This document shows positions 18,405 to 40,356 of a stretch of DNA of 64,000 bases, piece after piece; the first letter of the stretch is position 1, and each line of letters starts with the position of its first letter. The DNA is taken from positions 186,001 through 250,000 of IMG/VR virus record IMGVR_UViG_3300012988_000016, one strand, 5' to 3'. Under the pieces are notes generated by a model. That model did no database searches. It saw only the letters and a list, made by a program, of their open reading frames with translations, and was not told the DNA's origin. A program made the position numbers and the translations under genes.

Positions 18405-19397
18405 TCAGAACCGCATATCCAGGCCCGCCAATCGGGCCTGTTCCAAAACGCCTTGTTGCTCAGTCGACTCAAGGCGTTTTTGGATCTCGGCTGCCGATTG
18501 GGGGTTGATCTCAATCCCCAAATAGTCCCGTCCCAGCCGCTGTGCCTCCTGAAGAGTCGTCCCACTGCCGGCGAACGGATCCAGAACCAGACAAGGGTCG
18601 ATCTGATCCGTCTCACACTTGCAAGTCATTTGCCAACCCTTGGTCAGATATTCGGGGGGTTGGATGGACGGCATGCTGTATCCCTTGAAGGCGCCGGTCC
18701 CCACACTGCCGTAGCGGGTCGGGTGCCCTTCCCGCTCCGCCACTTCTGACAGGCGTTCCAACTGACGCTCCAGCGGGGCCCCACAGAGGCCACAGCAGCC
18801 TTTCTCGCTGGTGGAGAGGCGGATGCACCGGTTCGGTAGAGCGGTCGGGAATACGGCAACGTGGGCGCCTCCATAGCGTTCAGTCGGTATGTTCCAGCAG
18901 TTCCGCAGATTGGCGTTTGAGTCTTCTCTGACCGCCTCAGAGTCGTAATAGTAGTGCTTTTGCTTGGTCAGCAGGAACAACGGTTCGAATGCTCTGGAGG
19001 GGCGGTCATGCACGTTCTCCGGCATACCGTTTCCCTTGTTCCAGATGATTTCCGACCGAAGGAAGAACCCTATTTGGCGCAACCGGAGGACGAGCCGCCA
19101 GGGTATTCCCAACAGCTCCTTGTTTAGGTAGGTATCGTCGATGTTGAGCCAGAACGAACCGTCGTCCCTCAGGACTCGGTACACTTGTTGGCATATTTCG
19201 ACCATGTGATCCAGATACTGCTCTGAGGTCTTCTCATGGCCCAGCTGACCCTGCCAACCGTCCGGCCATTCAGCTGATGTGGGACCGTAGTCTCTTAGGG
19301 CATAATAGGGCGGGCTGGTGATGCAACAGTGGACGTGTTGATCGGGGAGCTGGTGTAGTTGGTCGAGTGCGGCGCCTAGGAGGATCTGATTTCTCAC
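18405..19397 (-). CDS. Site-specific DNA methyltransferase (N4-C/N6-A, beta class)
   Basis: CCITSPPYY catalytic motif precedes VLDPFAGSGTT (SAM-binding); start moved to GTG 19397, 10 nt after GGTGTA. Confidence 0.9.
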   Translation of the reverse strand: MRNQILLGAALDQLHQLPDQHVHCCITSPPYYALRDYGPTSAEWPDGWQGQLGHEKTSEQYLDHMVEICQQVYRVLRDDGSFWLNIDDTYLNKELLGIPWRLVLRLRQIGFFLRSEIIWNKGNGMPENVHDRPSRAFEPLFLLTKQKHYYYDSEAVREDSNANLRNCWNIPTERYGGAHVAVFPTALPNRCIRLSTSEKGCCGLCGAPLERQLERLSEVAEREGHPTRYGSVGTGAFKGYSMPSIQPPEYLTKGWQMTCKCETDQIDPCLVLDPFAGSGTTLQEAQRLGRDYLGIEINPQSAAEIQKRLESTEQQGVLEQARLAGLDMRF

Positions 19398-19443
19398 TGG
19401 TGGAGGATACACCAAAAATTCTTTTGCAAACTCTCAGATGGTC

Positions 19444-19449
19444 GGTGTA
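19444..19449 (+). promoter_or_regulatory. GGTGTA motif upstream of tracrRNA (putative promoter)
   Basis: Same motif as upstream of more than 30 genes; 12 nt before the anti-repeat; TTGCAA at 19424-19429. Confidence 0.55.
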
Positions 19450-19458
19450 TAGGAACAT

Positions 19459-19560
19459 CACGATCTAAAGGGGTCGCTAACCAGGTCCCCAGCTACCACC
19501 AAATATGCAAAGCTGGGCAAAGGGCCCCTAGGACCAACATCCTAGGGGCCTTTATTTTTC
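19459..19560 (+). ncRNA. tracrRNA
   Basis: 19462-19481 GATCTAAAGGGGTCGCTAAC pairs with repeat nt 1-19 (one U bulge, one G-U, one U-U mismatch); followed by CCCAGCT/AGCTGGG stem and GGCCCCTAGG/CCTAGGGGCC hairpin with T-rich tail; ends approximate. Confidence 0.85.
19521..19560 (+). terminator. Intrinsic terminator-like hairpin at tracrRNA 3' end
   Basis: AGGGCCCCTAGG-ACCAACAT-CCTAGGGGCCTT followed by TATTTTTC. Confidence 0.7.
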
Positions 19561-19572
19561 CAGGACATAGAC

Positions 19573-22500
19573 ATGACACTTACATTGGGTCTAGATATCG
19601 GTACCAACTCGATTGGGCACGCACTTGTTGAGACGGATGAACAGGGGAACGTCATCTCCCTGAAACACATTGGAGTCCGAATCTTCAGTGACAGTCGAAC
19701 CGATAAAGAGAAGAAGCCTCTCAACGAGGCCAGGCGAACGGCTAGACAAGCGAGACGACAACGCGAACGCAAGAAGTCGAGGATGAAAGCCGTCTTGCGA
19801 GTATTGCGAGAACACGGGCTAGACCCTCAAGATTCCCTTCTGGAGAGCCCTTACGCAGCCAGGGCCGCCGCCCTCACAGGGCCGCTCAGCAGGTCTCAGG
19901 TAGGGAGGGCTATCTGGCATATTGCCAAACACAGAGGCCCTCGACTGGTGCGAAAAGATGACAAGGAGCAAGGTGTCATCAAAGAAGGCATCCGCAGTCT
20001 CGAAACCGAGATGCTGGCACAGAAGGCTCGGACCTATGGTGAACTTCTTGAAAGAATCCGGCTGAATGGTGGGTCTGTACGTCTCCGAGCTAACAGTGAG
20101 GGCTCATACAATCGTTACCCGTCCAGACAGGTGATGGAGGCTGAGTTCAACCATCTGTGGGAATCTCAAGTACCGCACCATCCAGAGGTTATGACCGAGG
20201 CTCTTAGAGAGCGCCTCATAACGGCCATCTTCTATCAGCGTCCTTTGAAGCCAGTCTATCCAGGGCGATGTACGCTGGAACCAGATGAATATCGGATGCC
20301 AAAGGCGATGCCAATGGCCCATGAGTTCAGGATCCGATCGGAGGTGGCCAATCTGACCCTCAAACAGGGAGATGAGGTCCGAACCCTAACGGCCAATGAG
20401 CGTCAAATCGTAGTTGATGGTTTGTTGAACTCAGAGAAGCTGACCTTTACCGCTATCGCCAAACTGCTGGGATTTCGTGCCGGCGTGAAGTTCAATCTCG
20501 AAGGAGATGACGGTGATGGGGGCAAGGCCAGGAATTACTTGATCGGAGATCTGACTTCCAGCAAGATTCGTAGTGTGTGGCCCAATTTCTCTAAAATGCC
20601 GGAGAACATGAGACTTAGCTTGATCCTAGCATTGCTTGACATTGACGATGAGCTAGAACTCAAATGTAAGCTTCGATCCGATTTTGGGATTTCACCAGAG
20701 GTGGTGGATCAGTTGTCTAGTTTGATGCTGCCAGCCGGATACATCAATCTCAGCCAAAAAGCTGTGAGGGCCGTCTTGCCTTATCTTCAACAAGGTATGG
20801 GCTACGCACAAGCCTGTGCAGCTGCTGGATACCATCATTCCGATCATCGTCCAGAGGAATTGACCCCAATCCTACCCTTCTACAACGAACTCCCAGGAAT
20901 GAAGCGTTATCTGGGGCAGGAACAAAAGGGTAAACCTGGAAGGATCTCTAATCCAACAGTCCATGTGGCTTTGAATCAGGTTCGCAAGGTTTACAATACG
21001 TTGGTTGAGGTCTTTGGGGTGCCTGATTGTGTCAATATCGAGGTCACTCGTGAATTGAAACAGACGGCCAAGCAGAAGATCGCGGCCAATAAGCAGAATG
21101 CGGCCAACAAGAAGGTTCGTGACGCCTTCAAAGAGAAGTTCCCCGAGCGTGCCAACTCCGACCAAGACCTGGTACGTTGGAGGTTGTGGAATGAACTTCC
21201 AGAGGAGCGCAAGGTCTGTGTCTACTCTGGAAAAGAGATTACTCTTAACGACCTTTTCTCACCTAGGGTTGAAATTGACCACATTATCCCCCACTCGATC
21301 TCTTTCGACAACAGCCCGTCTAATCTGGTGCTTTGTGCTCAAGGGGCTAACCGTCTGAAGACCAATAAGACTCCTCATGAAGCCTTCGCCCCTGGCCTAC
21401 ACAAGGAGTTCAACTGGTCAGCCATTGAGCAACGAGTGTTTGAACTGGCAGCTGACAAATGCGGCACCTGGGCTAAAAAGAAGCTTCGCTTCAAGCCAGA
21501 TTATCTAGATGTAGGAGGGGATTTCGCCACCAGGCAATTGAACGACACGGCTTACTTGTCAAAAGTTGTCCGTATCTACCTAGGACACTCCTGTCCAAAG
21601 GTGTTAGCCGTACGGGGTGCCGTTACGGCCATCTGCCGCAAAGAATGGGGCCTCGACCGATTGTTACGAGACACAGTTTCCGATCATGCCGATCTGTTCT
21701 GCCTATCCTCGGTCAAGAGCACGGGGGTGTTTATGGCCCCTCATCATGTGACAGGAGGGTCGCACGACATTCGGGAAGATTGCTCGGTCAATAAGCTGCT
21801 CAAATTTGGAGCTGAAGTAGTACGTGTAGATCCTATCGGGAGGTTCCAAACGCCAGGTGAGATTCGCAGGATCGAGCCAAGAGGTCCAAAGGTTAACTTC
21901 CAAAATCTTAGAACCACAACTAGGAAGCCGTTGACTAGCCTTACGGCGAACAGTATCTCACAGATCAAAGATGATGGGTTGAGAACCAAAATCACAGCCC
22001 ATATCAAAGAGGTCAATCCCAAGCTCCTTACCGACACTCTGAATCGAGAGGCTAAGGTAGAATTGTCCAGGCTGTTGGGAGAGTTTGGCCAGAAGCACTC
22101 CGTTGGAAGGGTCCGGATTGTCGCCAACAAATCTGGAGTCATCGTTCGACACGGAGCCGCTAACCAACACACAAAGGTGTTGATAGCAGATACGAATCAT
22201 CATGGAGATGTGGTGGTAAGAGACGGTAAAGTGAAGATGCTCCTGACCACGTATGCAGAACTCAACCATCCACCAGAAGTGGAAGCTGGATGGACGCTAA
22301 AGATGCGACTGCACAAGGGCGACATGATTCGTGTGCCAGGATACGTCTACAACAAATACCCAAAGAAGCCGAATTATGGGAAGGACAGATCTGACCACCG
22401 GCATCATGCGGTGGATGCTTTCGTGATAGCTTGCATCACACCAAGTCTGTTGCGCAAGATCAGTCGTTCCATCGCCTTGTCCAAGTACAACCAGTTGCAC

Positions 22501-22635
22501 GAGTTCCCAGAGCCGTACGAGAGGTTCAAGCAAGAACTGAAGACACATTTGAGGAAACTCGTTGTGTCCAATAAATTGGACCATAGCATCAGCGCCCCCA
22601 TTTTCACCGAAACGAACTACGGCTTCACAGCCTGA
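19573..22635 (+). CDS. cas9: Type II-C Cas9, 1020 aa, with rearranged C-terminal domain order
   Basis: RuvC-I LGLDIGTNSIG (D8), Arg-rich bridge helix, REC, RuvC-II NIEVTRE (E490), HNH EIDHIIP...N (H570), RQLNDTAY, RuvC-III DHRHHAVDA (H945/D948); flanked by tracrRNA and array. Confidence 0.97.
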   Translation: MTLTLGLDIGTNSIGHALVETDEQGNVISLKHIGVRIFSDSRTDKEKKPLNEARRTARQARRQRERKKSRMKAVLRVLREHGLDPQDSLLESPYAARAAALTGPLSRSQVGRAIWHIAKHRGPRLVRKDDKEQGVIKEGIRSLETEMLAQKARTYGELLERIRLNGGSVRLRANSEGSYNRYPSRQVMEAEFNHLWESQVPHHPEVMTEALRERLITAIFYQRPLKPVYPGRCTLEPDEYRMPKAMPMAHEFRIRSEVANLTLKQGDEVRTLTANERQIVVDGLLNSEKLTFTAIAKLLGFRAGVKFNLEGDDGDGGKARNYLIGDLTSSKIRSVWPNFSKMPENMRLSLILALLDIDDELELKCKLRSDFGISPEVVDQLSSLMLPAGYINLSQKAVRAVLPYLQQGMGYAQACAAAGYHHSDHRPEELTPILPFYNELPGMKRYLGQEQKGKPGRISNPTVHVALNQVRKVYNTLVEVFGVPDCVNIEVTRELKQTAKQKIAANKQNAANKKVRDAFKEKFPERANSDQDLVRWRLWNELPEERKVCVYSGKEITLNDLFSPRVEIDHIIPHSISFDNSPSNLVLCAQGANRLKTNKTPHEAFAPGLHKEFNWSAIEQRVFELAADKCGTWAKKKLRFKPDYLDVGGDFATRQLNDTAYLSKVVRIYLGHSCPKVLAVRGAVTAICRKEWGLDRLLRDTVSDHADLFCLSSVKSTGVFMAPHHVTGGSHDIREDCSVNKLLKFGAEVVRVDPIGRFQTPGEIRRIEPRGPKVNFQNLRTTTRKPLTSLTANSISQIKDDGLRTKITAHIKEVNPKLLTDTLNREAKVELSRLLGEFGQKHSVGRVRIVANKSGVIVRHGAANQHTKVLIADTNHHGDVVVRDGKVKMLLTTYAELNHPPEVEAGWTLKMRLHKGDMIRVPGYVYNKYPKKPNYGKDRSDHRHHAVDAFVIACITPSLLRKISRSIALSKYNQLHEFPEPYERFKQELKTHLRKLVVSNKLDHSISAPIFTETNYGFTA

Positions 22636-22700
22636 TTTGCGAGAGCCTCTATCGAGAGAGGCCTCATCTGCTCTTTGACAACCGAACCGCTCGCAAACCG

Positions 22701-22735
22701 TCGTGCAAGTACTCAATATTAATGTGCTTGCACGA
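22701..22735. repeat. Inverted repeat in CRISPR leader
   Basis: TCGTGCAAGTAC-N11-GTGCTTGCACGA, ending 5 nt before repeat 1. Confidence 0.75.
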
Positions 22736-22740
22736 ATAGG

Positions 22741-23717
22741 GTTGTGACCCCTTTTGATCTCTCGATCCATTCTCCCGTCTTGGCCATCCCCAATCTCACC
22801 GCCGGATCCGCGTTGTGACCCCTTTTGATCTCTCGATCCATTCTCCCACCCAGGCAACCAGTTTGTCCGCGCACCCCTAGAATGTTGTGACCCCTTTTGA
22901 TCTCTCGATCCATTCTCCCAGTCAGGCCAATGTCTCATACTACCTAAAGAGAGCTGTTGTGACCCCTTTTGATCTCTCGATCCATTCTCCCGGTGAAAGG
23001 ATGATGTCAGAATGACTTGGTCAATGTGTTGTGACCCCTTTTGATCTCTCGATCCATTCTCCCAGCCAACAGCTTCGCTGCACAGATGCAGTTTGATGCG
23101 TTGTGACCCCTTTTGATCTCTCGATCCATTCTCCCCGAGCCAACTGACGTCAGCGAACCACGCCCCCTGGTAGTTGTGACCCCTTTTGATCTCTCGATCC
23201 ATTCTCCCTCGACGCCCGAGATCGTCACCAAGTACACGCACACGTTGTGACCCCTTTTGATCTCTCGATCCATTCTCCCTACGTGCCGAGACGCTGTTCG
23301 ACTGTTACAAGGAGGTTGTGACCCCTTTTGATCTTCCCGATCCATTCTCACTACGCTGCTCAAGTAAGAAGGCGTTTCCGATCTGTTATGACCCCCTTTA
23401 TCTTCTAACCCATTCCACCACCCCTCTTGGTGCTGGTGTCTCCGCGTGAAGTTGTGACCCCTTATCGTCTTGTCCTTTCACACCAACTCGTCGCCAACAC
23501 GAAGTTGTGACCCCCTTCTGATCTTCTGATCCTTTCTCACAACAAGAGAACCGTTACTCAACACGGAACATAAGGTTGTGACCCCTTTTAGATCCCTTCG
23601 AGACATTCTCCTCTATCGTAAACACCTCGGCGTTGTAACCCCTTTTGATCGTCTGATCCTTTCTCACGTTGTGAGATCAACTACAACGAGCTCGCCAAGT
23701 GTTGTGACCCCTTTTGA
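22741..23717 (+). CRISPR. CRISPR array: 36-nt repeat GTTGTGACCCCTTTTGATCTCTCGATCCATTCTCCC, 8 identical plus 7 degenerate copies
   Basis: Identical repeats start at 22741, 22812, 22884, 22956, 23028, 23100, 23173 and 23244; degenerate ones at 23315, 23385, 23451, 23504, 23575, 23632 and 23701; first 8 spacers 35-37 nt; orientation taken from tracr pairing and trailer decay. Confidence 0.97.
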
Positions 23718-23803
23718 GTACGTCGAGTGACCTGAAACGTCAACGATACGAAGGCCGAGCTCCTCAGGGGGTTCGGCCTTTGCCGTTTGGTGTATCGATC
23801 CCC

Positions 23804-24421
23804 ATGCCTCCGCCCGACCCTCCTGCTTCAAGCCTACAGATAGACCTGAATGGCCTGATCACACCCTTCGGCGGGGGGCTGACCGGTCTCCCGCCTGGAG
23901 AGTTGTGGAACCTGTCGGGCGTCGGTAGTTTGGTCTATTCGGGGGAGTTCACCCAGCAGGTGTTCGATAGAATGATCGCCAGATGTGTTGGTGGGGTCAG
24001 GCCTGCCTTTGCGATCATGAATCGAACCGCCTACAACGAGTGTGTGATGAATGGCGGGTGTCAGAACACCATCACTCCGATGCCCTCAATCGAAGGCACC
24101 CACACTACTTCAGTCAGCTACGCGGGGATCCGTCTCTATGTCAACAATGAGACGTCCAATGTATCGATATTGCTGAGCAGTGACTTTGTTCAGCTGAGTA
24201 TCGCCCAAAGGATCGACCCGCCCTTCACCTCTGTCCCGATCACTGGATTCACCCGTTTACAATTGGAGTGGATGATACCATCCGGGGCTAGAGACGGCTT
24301 CGATGATAGTGTAGCGTTCCTCCATTCTCCTCAGGATTTCACCAAAATCATGTCTGAGCCGGTCCGACAGAGCAGGCTACAGATCCTGCGTGACGGTGAT
24401 GGGTTGAAAGCACAGGAATGA
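23804..24421 (+). CDS. Hypothetical protein with shared C-terminal motif
   Basis: Start moved to ATG 23804 (9 nt after GGTGTA 23789-23794); ends VRQSRLQILRDGDGLKAQE. Confidence 0.7.
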   Translation: MPPPDPPASSLQIDLNGLITPFGGGLTGLPPGELWNLSGVGSLVYSGEFTQQVFDRMIARCVGGVRPAFAIMNRTAYNECVMNGGCQNTITPMPSIEGTHTTSVSYAGIRLYVNNETSNVSILLSSDFVQLSIAQRIDPPFTSVPITGFTRLQLEWMIPSGARDGFDDSVAFLHSPQDFTKIMSEPVRQSRLQILRDGDGLKAQE

Positions 24422-39835: not shown

Positions 39836-39996
39836 AATAGCCCATGAAAAAGCAAGAATTCAACATCAAGCCGCTGGTGGCGGCCGTGTTCAGGAAGATA
39901 GCCGCCAAGCTACCGGCTGGCCGGATCGTTGGGCCTAGAAAAAAGACTAGAGTCAAACGGGCTTAATCTTTGGTCCATGGATCCGTTCTAGCAGCC

Positions 39997-40356
39997 ATGG
40001 CCGACAAGCTAATAATTCACGCTGCAAACAACTACTTCTTCTACCTCCAATGGGAAGTCACATTGGAGGATGGAGAGATCGATCTGGGCGCAATCCTTTG
40101 TGAATCCGCCGATGATGGTCTGGGCGAACCGCCGGCCGATCGTGGCAATTGGGAACACTGGATCGCCTGTAAGACCGTTCGAGAGCTGGAAGGCGTGGTG
40201 ATCGACGATCGTGGTGCCGCTTTCGAGACTCAGGCTCAAGCCAAGAAGGCTCTACAGGCCGTCAAGTTCGCCTGGACTCAAGATCGACCGCTGCCGGAGT
40301 GGGCCAAGACGGCTCTTGCTGAGGGATGGAAGGCTCCGAAGGGGTGGAAAGCTTGA
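39997..40356 (+). CDS. Hypothetical protein
   Basis: Ends LPEWAKTALAEGWKAPKGWKA. Confidence 0.6.
   Translation: MADKLIIHAANNYFFYLQWEVTLEDGEIDLGAILCESADDGLGEPPADRGNWEHWIACKTVRELEGVVIDDRGAAFETQAQAKKALQAVKFAWTQDRPLPEWAKTALAEGWKAPKGWKA

What the first reader, a model, noticed from the sequence alone, without database searches (positions are those of the whole stretch)
22777..23314. Spacers of 35-37 nt, unusually long for a Cas9 array
Seen: the 8 leader-proximal spacers are 35, 36, 36, 36, 36, 37, 35 and 35 nt. Established: type II arrays usually have ~30-nt spacers of tight length, whereas variable 34-38 nt spacers are typical of several type I/III adaptation machineries. Inference: with no cas1/2 here, a host class 1 Cas1-Cas2(-Cas4) may feed this array, which would be cross-type adaptation.
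Basis: partly seen in the sequence, partly recalled or inferred. Interest (0 to 1): 0.6.

Follow-up and report, generated by a model that had tools for sequence, protein, structure and literature searches.

The report
Long-spacer Cas9 array in jumbo phage
A giant soil phage carries a Cas9 gene, its helper RNA and a CRISPR array but no spacer-inserting genes, and its 35-37-letter spacers are longer than any of 1,205 spacers in related bacterial Cas9 systems, so a different, probably borrowed, insertion machinery filled the array.

Summary
Nine 36-nt repeats start at 22741, and the eight spacers between them are 35, 36, 36, 36, 36, 37, 35 and 35 nt.

The locus reads tracrRNA, cas9, leader, array. 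It lies in a 309-kb phage record (about 65% complete) with no Cas1, Cas2 or Cas4.

The length is a real anomaly:
- 69 arrays beside the nearest II-C Cas9 relatives hold 1,205 spacers of 25-32 nt, 83% exactly 30 and none 33 or longer.
- The only two other long-spacer arrays (31-38 nt) sit beside the two closest Cas9 relatives. Both are on contigs of related jumbo phages, and no cas1/cas2 was found on the fetched parts.
- Two protospacers found in the same soil metagenomes match spacers 6 and 7 over their full 37 and 35 nt, so the extra letters come from the target.

A non-II-C integrase is the best reading. It need not be class 1, because three II-B arrays (Cas9 plus Cas4) have 33-39-nt spacers. 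No host or matching repeat was found, and a third of the phage genome is unseen.

Separately, this Cas9 has its last three segments in the order C-B-A instead of A-B-C. Only one other protein among 1.84 billion representatives shares that order.

The parts
19440..19560 (+). Candidate tracrRNA. The anti-repeat is at 19462-19481, followed by a hairpin and an intrinsic terminator (stem 19520-19553 plus a T run).
   Evidence: This is the only repeat-complementary stretch next to cas9 (14 nt with 1 mismatch; sequence). The fold has z = -3.8. Cofolding pairs repeat positions 1-19 with it. The two sister loci show the same layout: anti-repeat ending in AAC, hairpin, terminator, then cas9. The 5' end was not determined.
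19573..22635 (+). cas9, 1020 aa (P0001), II-C-like. The catalytic residues D8, E490, H570/N593 and H945/D948 are present.
   Evidence: Family matches are Pfam HNH_4, RuvC_III and Cas9_a and TIGR01865 at 522 bits. Residues 4-697 are colinear with NmeCas9 structures. The database gene call (P0002, 895 aa) starts 125 codons too late and loses RuvC-I.
21664..21912 (+). Cas9 aa 698-780, segment 'C'. It is homologous to the extreme C-terminal part of the PI domain of ordinary II-C Cas9, but here it sits where RuvC-III normally begins.
   Evidence: BLASTP of this piece hits the last ~60 residues of ordinary Cas9s; the median distance to their C-terminus is 4 aa.
21910..22341 (+). Cas9 aa 780-923, segment 'B' (WED and the first part of PI), in its usual relative position.
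   Evidence: There are 69 BLASTP hits at about residues 836-975 of ordinary Cas9s.
22342..22632 (+). Cas9 aa 924-1020, segment 'A'. This is the RuvC-III catalytic segment (DHRHHAVDA ... TETNYG), moved to the C-terminus.
   Evidence: There are 144 BLASTP hits at about residues 733-815 of ordinary Cas9s. The invariant K, R, HRHH and DA residues are kept. In the model it docks on D8, E490 and residues 680-698.
22636..22740 (+). Presumed leader between the cas9 stop codon and the first repeat.
   Evidence: The identical repeats lie on this side and the decayed repeats on the far side. No sigma-70-like promoter was found.
22741..23351 (+). Intact part of the CRISPR array: 9 repeats and 8 spacers of 35-37 nt. 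The spacers of the finding span 22777-23314.
23136..23172 (+). Spacer 6 (37 nt), with a protospacer in a 7.1-kb contig of soil run X1.
   Evidence: record 2: the match covers 23136-23173 with 2 differences, and the flanks are unlike the window. The 3' flank reads GGGAATG.
23209..23243 (+). Spacer 7 (35 nt), with protospacers in contigs of soil runs X3 and X4.
   Evidence: records 11 and 15: the match covers 23208-23244 with 1 difference. The 3' flank reads GGGTTGG.
23352..23717 (+). Decayed trailer part of the array: about six further units (start-to-start 69, 67, 53, 71, 57, 69 nt) and a final 17-nt partial repeat.
23751..23790 (+). GC-rich hairpin followed by a T-rich stretch after the last partial repeat. 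It is the likely terminator of the array transcript.
   Evidence: Read directly from the sequence. It did not pass the strict scan.

Best explanation
This is the CRISPR array of a phage-borne type II-C-derived CRISPR-Cas9 locus that lacks an adaptation module. The layout is tracrRNA, cas9, leader, array, all on the + strand. The spacers are real target-derived sequences over their full 35-37 nt. Spacer length is fixed by the Cas1-Cas2 integrase and not by Cas9. The array was therefore filled by an integrase with a ruler of about 36 bp and 1-2 nt of slack. That is unlike the 30-bp ruler of the Cas1-Cas2 that accompanies every related II-C Cas9, and like the Cas4-associated modules (I-B/C/D, II-B, some type V). 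The most likely source is a host or a co-resident element acting in trans. The trait is inherited in a small lineage of related jumbo phages. Inferred, not shown: the pre-crRNA pairs with the tracrRNA, RNase III cuts the duplex, and the 5' (PAM-distal) surplus of each spacer is trimmed, so Cas9 uses about 20-24 nt and the extra length has no role in targeting. Shown: the anatomy, the lengths, the contrast with relatives, the protospacers, and the absence of cas1/2/4 in 309 kb. Inferred: who inserts the spacers, how the crRNA is processed, and the PAM.
For: Lengths and boundaries are. My own rough estimate of chance matches of this quality is about 1e-5 for the sequence scanned. Among relatives, 69 arrays with 1,205 spacers measure 25-32 nt; cas1 is detected in the loci of 65 of them, and none reaches 33 nt. 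Cas1-less viral II-C loci with 30-nt spacers exist (L082, and L083 in a 98%-complete provirus), so lacking cas1 does not by itself give long spacers. One genome (L064) has a type I-like array with 32-36-nt spacers about 7 kb from its II-C array, which keeps 30 nt, so II-C arrays are not normally cross-fed. The two nearest Cas9 relatives also have long spacers: L001 with 35, 38, 31, 36, and L108 with 36-38 plus two truncated units. No cas1/cas2 was found on the fetched parts of their contigs by tblastn. Those contigs share other genes with this phage, and the three Cas9s group together (SH-like support 0.996). L108 also has a TnpB/Cas12f-like gene with a mini-array of 35-nt spacers, which fits one external integrase serving both arrays. 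The record holds no Cas1, Cas2, Cas4 or Csn2 (the Csn2 search rang in none of its control genomes, so it carries no weight). Eight identical leader-side repeats indicate acquisitions by ordinary repeat duplication after the older repeats had diverged. Literature: almost all huge-phage CRISPR systems lack Cas1/2/4 and may use host proteins (PMC7162821). Type I-D Cas1-2 alone sets variable 35-36-bp spacers, whereas I-E and I-F are fixed at 32 (PMC5896167). Type IV-A3 acquires spacers in trans (bioRxiv 10.1101/2023.06.23.546257).
Against: No host or donor integrase has been identified. The repeat is unique to this record in IMG/VR and the JGI metagenomes. No other array carrying this repeat appeared in the four soil runs. 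The record is an estimated 65% of the genome, so phage cas1/2 genes could lie in the unseen part. The sister array is identical in three samples, so no ongoing acquisition was seen. Both protospacers have GGG on the Cas9-PAM side, which suggests Cas9-coupled selection as in true type II adaptation, or selection afterwards (n = 2). The three phage Cas9s are only 33-36% identical to each other, so their grouping could be affected by long branches.
Confidence: 0.55

Rival explanations
1. One reading: a host class 1 (type I or III) Cas1-Cas2(-Cas4) feeds the Cas9 array, which would be true cross-class adaptation.
For: Lengths of 35-37 nt with 1-2 nt of slack match I-D and I-B style integrases (PMC5896167). 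Class 1 systems are, from general knowledge, the commonest in soil bacteria. No adaptation genes are in the record.
Against: II-B arrays, which are class 2, show the same lengths (33-39 nt), so length cannot tell the class. No 5'-adjacent motif is shared by the two protospacers (CGT versus TTC), while the 3' side shares GGG. In L064 a type I-like array next to a II-C array does not cross-feed it. The integrase would also have to accept a foreign leader and repeat.
Confidence: 0.25
2. The phage lineage has its own dedicated adaptation module with a ~36-bp ruler, encoded away from cas9 in the part of the genome that was not assembled.
For: The record is about 65% complete. A related huge phage is 485 kb. 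The Cas9 cassette sits at different places in related phages, so the locus parts are not tightly linked. A 3' GGG next to both protospacers would fit Cas9-coupled acquisition.
Against: Cas operons are usually contiguous. None of the three phage contigs shows cas1/2 near cas9. Almost all huge-phage CRISPR systems lack Cas1/2/4 (PMC7162821).
Confidence: 0.15
3. The array is a frozen heirloom. Cassette and spacers were captured together from an unsampled bacterial type II variant with its own long-ruler Cas1-Cas2(-Cas4), and nothing has been added since.
For: The sister array is identical in three samples. Many repeats are decayed. No donor was found.
Against: Eight identical leader-side repeats after diverged older ones indicate later acquisitions. 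Two spacers match elements that co-occur in the same soils with only 1-2 differences. No such bacterial variant appears among 582 confirmed genome matches (80 loci examined), 676 word-search relatives or the exhaustive profile search.
Confidence: 0.12
4. Artefact: the repeat is really longer (about 42-44 nt) and the spacers are about 30 nt, or the array is an assembly error.
For: the repeat finder extended the family to 44 nt at 82-95% identity, because several spacers begin alike.
Against: The protospacers cover the full 35 and 37 nt. The similarity at the spacer 5' ends is reached by 353 of 2000 shuffles. An independent Logan assembly of run X1 reproduces both flanks exactly, though it collapses the identical repeats.
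Confidence: 0.01

Closest known systems
Chromosomal type II-C CRISPR-Cas9 (Neisseria meningitidis type; alphaproteobacterial and gammaproteobacterial relatives)
   Same: Cas9 residues 1-697 are colinear with NmeCas9 (E 1e-61) and 31-38% identical to many II-C Cas9s. The repeat is 36 nt and starts GTTGT. A tracrRNA with an anti-repeat, hairpins and a terminator is present.
   Different: There is no cas1-cas2. Spacers are 35-37 nt instead of 30. The array is transcribed in the same direction as cas9, whereas in the relatives the repeat reads antisense to cas9. The repeat lacks the TAAACT/TACAAT-like -10 box at its 3' end that II-C repeats carry (PMC5965381; read from the sequences). The C-terminal Cas9 segments are reordered.
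CRISPR-Cas systems of huge phages (Al-Shayeb et al. 2020, PMC7162821)
   Same: The carrier is a jumbo phage, the system is Cas9-based type II, Cas1/2/4 are absent and the array is compact. Use of host proteins has been proposed for such systems.
   Different: I found no report of a spacer-length shift relative to the effector's own family, or of a rearranged Cas9. The library does not hold every paper.
CampyICE1 Cas9 (Campylobacter integrative conjugative element, PMC8743540)
   Same: It is a II-C Cas9 with arrays and a tracrRNA on a mobile element without cas1/cas2, aimed at competing mobile elements. Co-option of chromosomal Cas1-Cas2 was proposed for it.
   Different: In that case the proposed helper is a same-type II-C module in the host. 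Here the spacer length argues against a II-C helper.
Type II-B arrays (Cas9 of the Csx12 family with Cas1-Cas2-Cas4)
   Same: Spacers are variable, 33-39 nt with mode 35.
   Different: The repeat is 37 nt with a ...CTGAAAC end. Cas9 belongs to another family: P0001 matches TIGR01865 and not TIGR03031. Cas4 is present there and absent here.
In-trans spacer acquisition by systems without their own integrase (for example type IV-A3 using type I-E Cas1-Cas2, bioRxiv 10.1101/2023.06.23.546257)
   Same: An effector plus array on a mobile element without cas1/cas2, filled by another system's integrase (abstract).
   Different: That case has been demonstrated, and from my own knowledge its repeats and leaders resemble the donor's. 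Here the donor is unknown and no matching repeat was found.

Membership tests
Type II CRISPR-Cas (Cas9 systems) | Cas9 with RuvC-I/II/III and HNH catalytic motifs | tested here: met
   D8, E490, H570, N593 and HRHHAVDA are present.
Type II CRISPR-Cas (Cas9 systems) | tracrRNA with an anti-repeat complementary to the CRISPR repeat | tested here: met
   The computational candidate at 19440-19560 is supported, and the sister loci have the same layout. Expression was not tested, and no RNA run holds the locus.
Subtype II-C | cas9-cas1-cas2 operon without csn2 or cas4 | tested here: not met
   The 308,895-bp record has no Cas1 or Cas2. The record is about 65% complete.
Subtype II-C | Cas9 sequence clusters with II-C Cas9 | tested here: met
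   The best structural and sequence matches are II-C Cas9s. The tree agrees.
Subtype II-C | 36-nt repeats with spacers of about 30 nt | tested here: not met
   The repeat is 36 nt, which fits. The spacers are 35-37 nt against 25-32 nt in 1,205 spacers of relatives.
Subtype II-C | Canonical order RuvC-III, then WED, then PI at the C-terminus | tested here: not met
   The segment order is C-B-A instead of A-B-C.
Subtype II-B | Csx12-type Cas9 (TIGR03031), a cas4 gene and 37-nt repeats | tested here: not met
   The NCBIfam scan lists TIGR01865 and no TIGR03031 match. No Cas4 is present. The repeat is 36 nt.
Subtype II-B | Variable spacers of about 33-39 nt | tested here: met
   Lengths of 35-37 nt fall within the range seen in three II-B loci. 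This is a likeness in length only.
Adaptation-less CRISPR-Cas of huge phages | Encoded on a phage genome larger than 200 kb | tested here: met
   It is an IMG/VR virus record of 308,895 bp. The helicase is 45% identical to that of a 485-kb uncultured phage.
Adaptation-less CRISPR-Cas of huge phages | Effector and compact array present, Cas1/Cas2/Cas4 absent | tested here: met
   within the sequenced 309 kb.
In-trans (cross-system) spacer acquisition | A donor integrase in the same cell that accepts this leader and repeat | not testable with these tools
   The host is unknown and no matching repeat exists elsewhere.

The most novel reading that the evidence does not exclude
A lineage of soil and freshwater jumbo phages carries a Cas9 whose array is loaded in trans by a heterologous, Cas4-type (possibly class 1) host integrase. 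That would be the first case of cross-type adaptation feeding a type II effector. In two of the three known members the Cas9 is also a natural, non-circular rearrangement (PI tail, then WED/PI, then RuvC-III) that still assembles a working RuvC site.
Probability: 0.3. Interest if true: 0.8.

Novelty: new variant of a known kind. Interest (0 to 1): 0.66.

Why it matters
Spacer length is a fingerprint of the integrase. A Cas9 array whose fingerprint differs from its whole Cas9 family suggests that effector and adaptation modules can be mixed across subtypes, or even classes, in nature.

This gives a concrete test of how phages that lack Cas1-Cas2 keep their arrays current. Take this leader and repeat, supply candidate integrases, and measure the length of what is inserted.

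The reordered Cas9 shows that the RuvC-III, WED and PI segments can be reconnected in another order. That bears on Cas9 evolution and on engineering compact or split enzymes.

Tried and rejected
- **Repeat in public collections.** It was not found in IMG/VR. In the JGI metagenomes the only real hit is the source contig, plus three chance single hits inside genes.
- **Protospacer searches.** The whole array found nothing in INPHARED phages or PLSDB plasmids. The 3' halves of spacers 1, 2 and 8 and the flanks of both protospacers found nothing in IMG/VR. There is no self-target in the 309-kb record.
- **More members of the rearranged Cas9 clade.** A word search on residues 690-1020 gave only ordinary Cas9s. 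An exhaustive profile search found only P0003 and the window's own protein. A search from P0004 found only ordinary II-C Cas9s at 35-41% identity. A single-protein scan of IMG/VR found nothing.
- **Full-length AlphaFold2 models.**
  - The first job failed.
  - With full-length relatives as the alignment, residues 692-779 and 913-1020 had pLDDT below 50 because those segments are misaligned.
  - With relatives trimmed to their N-terminal part, the relocated RuvC-III helices reached pLDDT about 67-73, but segment C and the linkers stayed below 40.
  - The overall topology is therefore not settled. Aligning relatives as separate pieces failed because MAFFT smeared the fragments.
- **Alternative anti-repeat.** The best duplex energy outside the array is at 40051-40110 (+). 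I rejected it because it lies inside an ORF, pairs with the 3' half of the repeat and has no terminator.
- **Shared motif at the spacer 5' ends** (GCC at positions 6-8 in four spacers). It is not beyond chance: 353 of 2000 shuffles reach it.
- **Spacer turnover.** The P0004 array is identical in three samples. The Logan assembly collapses the window's identical repeats. Both results are uninformative.
- **Rfam.** No family matched in the window.

Full report
**1. What is there**

The window is bases 186001-250000 of a 308,895-bp IMG/VR virus record. It is linear and CheckV estimates it at 65% complete. Its contig name is Ga0164306_10000002, and it is found in soil metagenome runs. Tail-spike, tail-fibre and helicase PHROG matches fit a jumbo phage. 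So does a helicase 45% identical to that of a 485-kb uncultured huge phage.

The locus has five parts, all on the + strand:
- A candidate tracrRNA lies at about 19440-19560. Its anti-repeat is at 19462-19481, followed by a hairpin and a terminator with stem 19520-19553.
- cas9 occupies 19573-22635 and encodes 1020 aa. It matches HNH_4, RuvC_III and Cas9_a, scores 522 bits on TIGR01865, and is colinear with NmeCas9 over residues 4-697.
- A 105-bp presumed leader follows, at 22636-22740.
- Nine 36-nt repeats with eight spacers span 22741-23351.
- About six decayed units and a partial repeat extend to 23717, followed by a terminator-like hairpin.

**2. The observation**

The eight spacers are 35, 36, 36, 36, 36, 37, 35 and 35 nt, exactly as reported. 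The boundaries are firm because the bases flanking the 36-nt repeat vary.

The boundaries are also confirmed independently. Logan contigs from the same soil studies match spacer 6 over 23136-23173 with 2 differences (a 7.1-kb contig in run X1). They match spacer 7 over 23208-23244 with 1 difference (contigs in runs X3 and X4). In each case the contig continues into unrelated sequence on both sides. These are protospacers, so the full 37 and 35 nt come from the target.

My rough estimate of chance matches of that quality in the amount of sequence scanned is about 1e-5. That figure is my own arithmetic, not a tool result.

**3. Is the length unusual?**

I fetched 80 bacterial loci and 21 IMG/VR loci that encode Cas9s 25-38% identical to this one and measured their arrays.
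- Across 69 arrays in 68 loci there are 1,205 spacers. After normalising to a 36-nt repeat they measure 25-32 nt. Of these, 999 are exactly 30 and none reaches 33.
- cas1 is detected in the loci of 65 of the arrays.
- Three Cas1-less loci still have 30-nt spacers: L067, L082 and L083. L083 lies in a 98%-complete provirus without Cas1. Losing cas1 is therefore not what makes spacers long.
- One genome (L064) has a type I-like array with 32-36-nt spacers about 7 kb from its II-C array, and the II-C array keeps 30 nt. II-C arrays are therefore not routinely cross-fed.

**4. Who else has long spacers?**

Only the two nearest Cas9 relatives do.
- P0003 is 36% identical to P0001 and colinear with it from end to end. 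It sits on a 19.9-kb contig (L001) laid out as array, tracrRNA, cas9. Its repeats are 36 nt and its spacers 35, 38, 31 and 36 nt.
- P0004 is 33% identical. It sits on contigs L108-L110 laid out as tracrRNA, leader, array, tracrRNA, cas9. Its spacers are 36, 36, 36, 37, 37, 38, 36, (23), 36, 36, 37, 36 and (19) nt.
- No cas1/cas2 was found on the fetched parts of either contig.
- Both contigs share several non-CRISPR genes with this phage at 45-67% amino-acid identity. All three are therefore related jumbo phages.
- The Cas9 cassette sits at different genomic positions in them. The two gene blocks that flank it in L108 are adjacent in this phage at 95-98 kb.
- A FastTree of the N-terminal 720 aa groups the three (0.96 and 0.996). 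With only 33-36% identity, and with P0004 being 38-41% identical to ordinary II-C Cas9s, long-branch effects cannot be excluded.
- The next group out has adjacent cas1-cas2, and the one array found there has a 66-nt period, meaning 30-nt spacers.
- L108 also carries a TnpB/Cas12f-like gene followed directly by a three-repeat mini-array with 35-nt spacers.

**5. Is "long means class 1" justified?**

It is not. I located three type II-B loci, each with a Csx12-type Cas9 (two of the three above the TIGR03031 cut-off) and Cas4 between cas9 and the array. Their arrays have 37-nt repeats and 33-39-nt spacers with mode 35.

The length distribution here is that of Cas4-associated integrases in general. 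Kieper et al. showed that I-D Cas1-2 alone sets variable 35-36-bp spacers, while I-E and I-F are fixed at 32 (PMC5896167). The data therefore support "not the II-C integrase". They do not discriminate class 1 from II-B-like or type V-like modules.

**6. Where could the integrase be?**

The 309-kb record has no Cas1, Cas2 or Cas4. Csn2 and TnpB domains were also not found, but the Csn2 search rang in none of its control genomes, so it shows nothing. About a third of the genome is unseen.

The repeat occurs nowhere else in IMG/VR or the JGI metagenomes. No other contig carrying it appeared in the four soil runs. There is therefore no candidate host array.

[quoted passage not shown] CampyICE1 is a comparable Cas1-less II-C Cas9 on a mobile element (PMC8743540). 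Type IV-A3 systems acquire spacers in trans.

I therefore rank supply in trans by a non-II-C integrase first. A phage-own module in the missing part comes second. A frozen inherited array comes third. The third is weakened by the eight identical leader-side repeats and by near-exact protospacers in the same soils.

**7. PAM side**

Read on the crRNA-sense strand, the 3' flanks are GGGAATG for spacer 6 and GGGTTGG for spacer 7. The 5' flanks end in ...GCATCGT and ...GCATTTC.

The shared GGG is on the side where Cas9 reads its PAM. No motif is shared directly next to the 5' end. With n = 2 and a GC-rich target this is only a hint, but it does not favour a type I-style PAM on the opposite side.

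**8. The Cas9 itself (outside the finding, but the most unusual thing here)**

In ordinary II-C Cas9 the region after residue ~700 has three segments in a fixed order:
- A, the RuvC-III catalytic segment (HRHHAxDA ... ETxYG).
- B, the WED domain and the first part of PI.
- C, the PI tail ending ...VRVDPIGR.

In P0001 the order is C (698-780), B (780-923), A (924-1020). Each piece hits the corresponding place in 13, 69 and 144 ordinary Cas9s respectively. P0003 has the same order.

A profile of this C-B-A region was searched against 1.84 billion representative proteins. It found only P0003 (685 bits) and the window's own protein (612 bits) as single colinear matches. The next hit scores 153 bits in three separate stretches.

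The relocated segment keeps every invariant residue. Linkers rich in K, P, N, G and Y join the pieces.

I folded residues 1-700 and 922-1020 as two chains:
- Residues 941-956 dock onto D8, residues 13-19, E490 and residues 680-698.
- The score (ipSAE) is 0.79 against 0.00 for the best of three controls. That mark was reached by 58 of 80 solved complexes and 2 of 110 mismatched pairs.
- The runs agree in at least 65% of contacts, and the partner's pLDDT is at least 57.
- The tool warns that such a pass can come from memory of solved Cas9 structures. It shows likeness, not function.

Full-length AlphaFold2 models were confident only for residues 1-690, with moderate-to-good confidence for part of B. 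The relocated helices reached pLDDT of about 70 at best, so the overall topology is unresolved. I found no paper on a natural rearranged Cas9, only engineered permutants.

**9. Verdict**

The broad sense of the interpretation, that a different integrase probably supplied in trans filled the array, is the best explanation. The specific sense, that the integrase is host class 1, is unproven and not required.

Phage Cas9 systems without adaptation genes are already known. New here are the long-spacer signature shared by a small phage lineage and the reordered Cas9.

Noticed in passing
window 21664-22632 (Cas9 aa 698-1020); L001 646-3903: The last three Cas9 segments are in the order C-B-A (PI tail, WED/PI, RuvC-III) instead of A-B-C. 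Only P0003 shares this among 1.84 billion representatives. The relocated RuvC-III segment keeps all invariant residues and docks on the RuvC site in a two-chain model (score 0.79 against 0.00 for the controls).
   Followed up: yes
window 19440-19560 (+): Candidate tracrRNA directly upstream of cas9. Its anti-repeat pairs with only about the first 19 nt of the repeat, with one bulge. The three phage loci share an 'AAC-[A/C]AG' junction after the anti-repeat.
   Followed up: partly
window 23136-23172 and 23209-23243: Protospacers for spacers 6 and 7 lie in low-depth contigs (depth 5-7, against 23 for the phage) of the same soil metagenomes. Both have GGG on the 3' flank and GCAT at positions -7 to -4 on the 5' flank. 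The targeted element could not be identified, because only 30-nt flanks were visible and IMG/VR has no match.
   Followed up: partly
window 23315-23717: The trailer part of the array is heavily decayed. Repeats are 64-94% identical to the consensus, and two units are shortened to 53 and 57 nt. The sister array in L108 shows two repeat sub-families, which suggests long-lived, slowly growing or fused arrays.
   Followed up: no
window 22777-23314 (spacer 5' ends): Several spacers begin alike: AGYCAGGC, AGCCAAC, and GCC at positions 6-8. This made repeat finder extend the repeat to 44 nt. A shuffle test finds it within chance (353 of 2000).
   Followed up: yes
window 40051-40110 (+): This is the strongest duplex with the repeat outside the array (-38.5 kcal/mol). 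It lies inside ORF 39970-40356 and pairs with the 3' half of the repeat. I judged it to be chance and not a tracrRNA.
   Followed up: partly
window 18405-19415 (-): An N6/N4 DNA methyltransferase gene sits immediately upstream of the tracrRNA. L001 also ends in an N6_N4 methyltransferase that matches it by tblastx. A possible link between self-DNA modification and the CRISPR locus was not examined.
   Followed up: no
window 19573-19947: The public gene call for this Cas9 (P0002, 895 aa) starts at an internal GTG 125 codons downstream. It omits the RuvC-I motif DIGTNSIG, which is in frame upstream.
   Followed up: yes
L108 236-1888 and 8180-9560: The sister phage contig carries a 490-aa TnpB/Cas12f-like gene followed directly by a three-repeat mini-array (36-nt repeat, 35-nt spacers). 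It also has two tracrRNA-like copies flanking its Cas9 array.
   Followed up: partly
G000 95077-97947 versus L108 7053-18925: The two gene blocks that flank the Cas9 cassette in L108 are adjacent in this phage, whose own cassette lies 110 kb away. The cassette has therefore moved within the phage lineage.
   Followed up: partly
window 23810-24393: A 217-kb contig at depth 23 in soil runs X3 and X4 is 97% identical over this stretch only and diverges on both sides. It is a mosaic relative of this phage. Whether it carries a CRISPR locus is unknown.
   Followed up: no
L064 6799-7881 and 14625-15649: An Opitutales genome has a type I-like array (32-nt repeat, 32-36-nt spacers) about 7 kb from a II-C array with strict 30-nt spacers. 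It serves as a natural control showing no cross-feeding.
   Followed up: partly
L082, L083 (IMG/VR): These viral or proviral contigs carry a II-C Cas9 and an array but no Cas1, and keep 30-nt spacers. They are presumably served by a host II-C module.
   Followed up: partly
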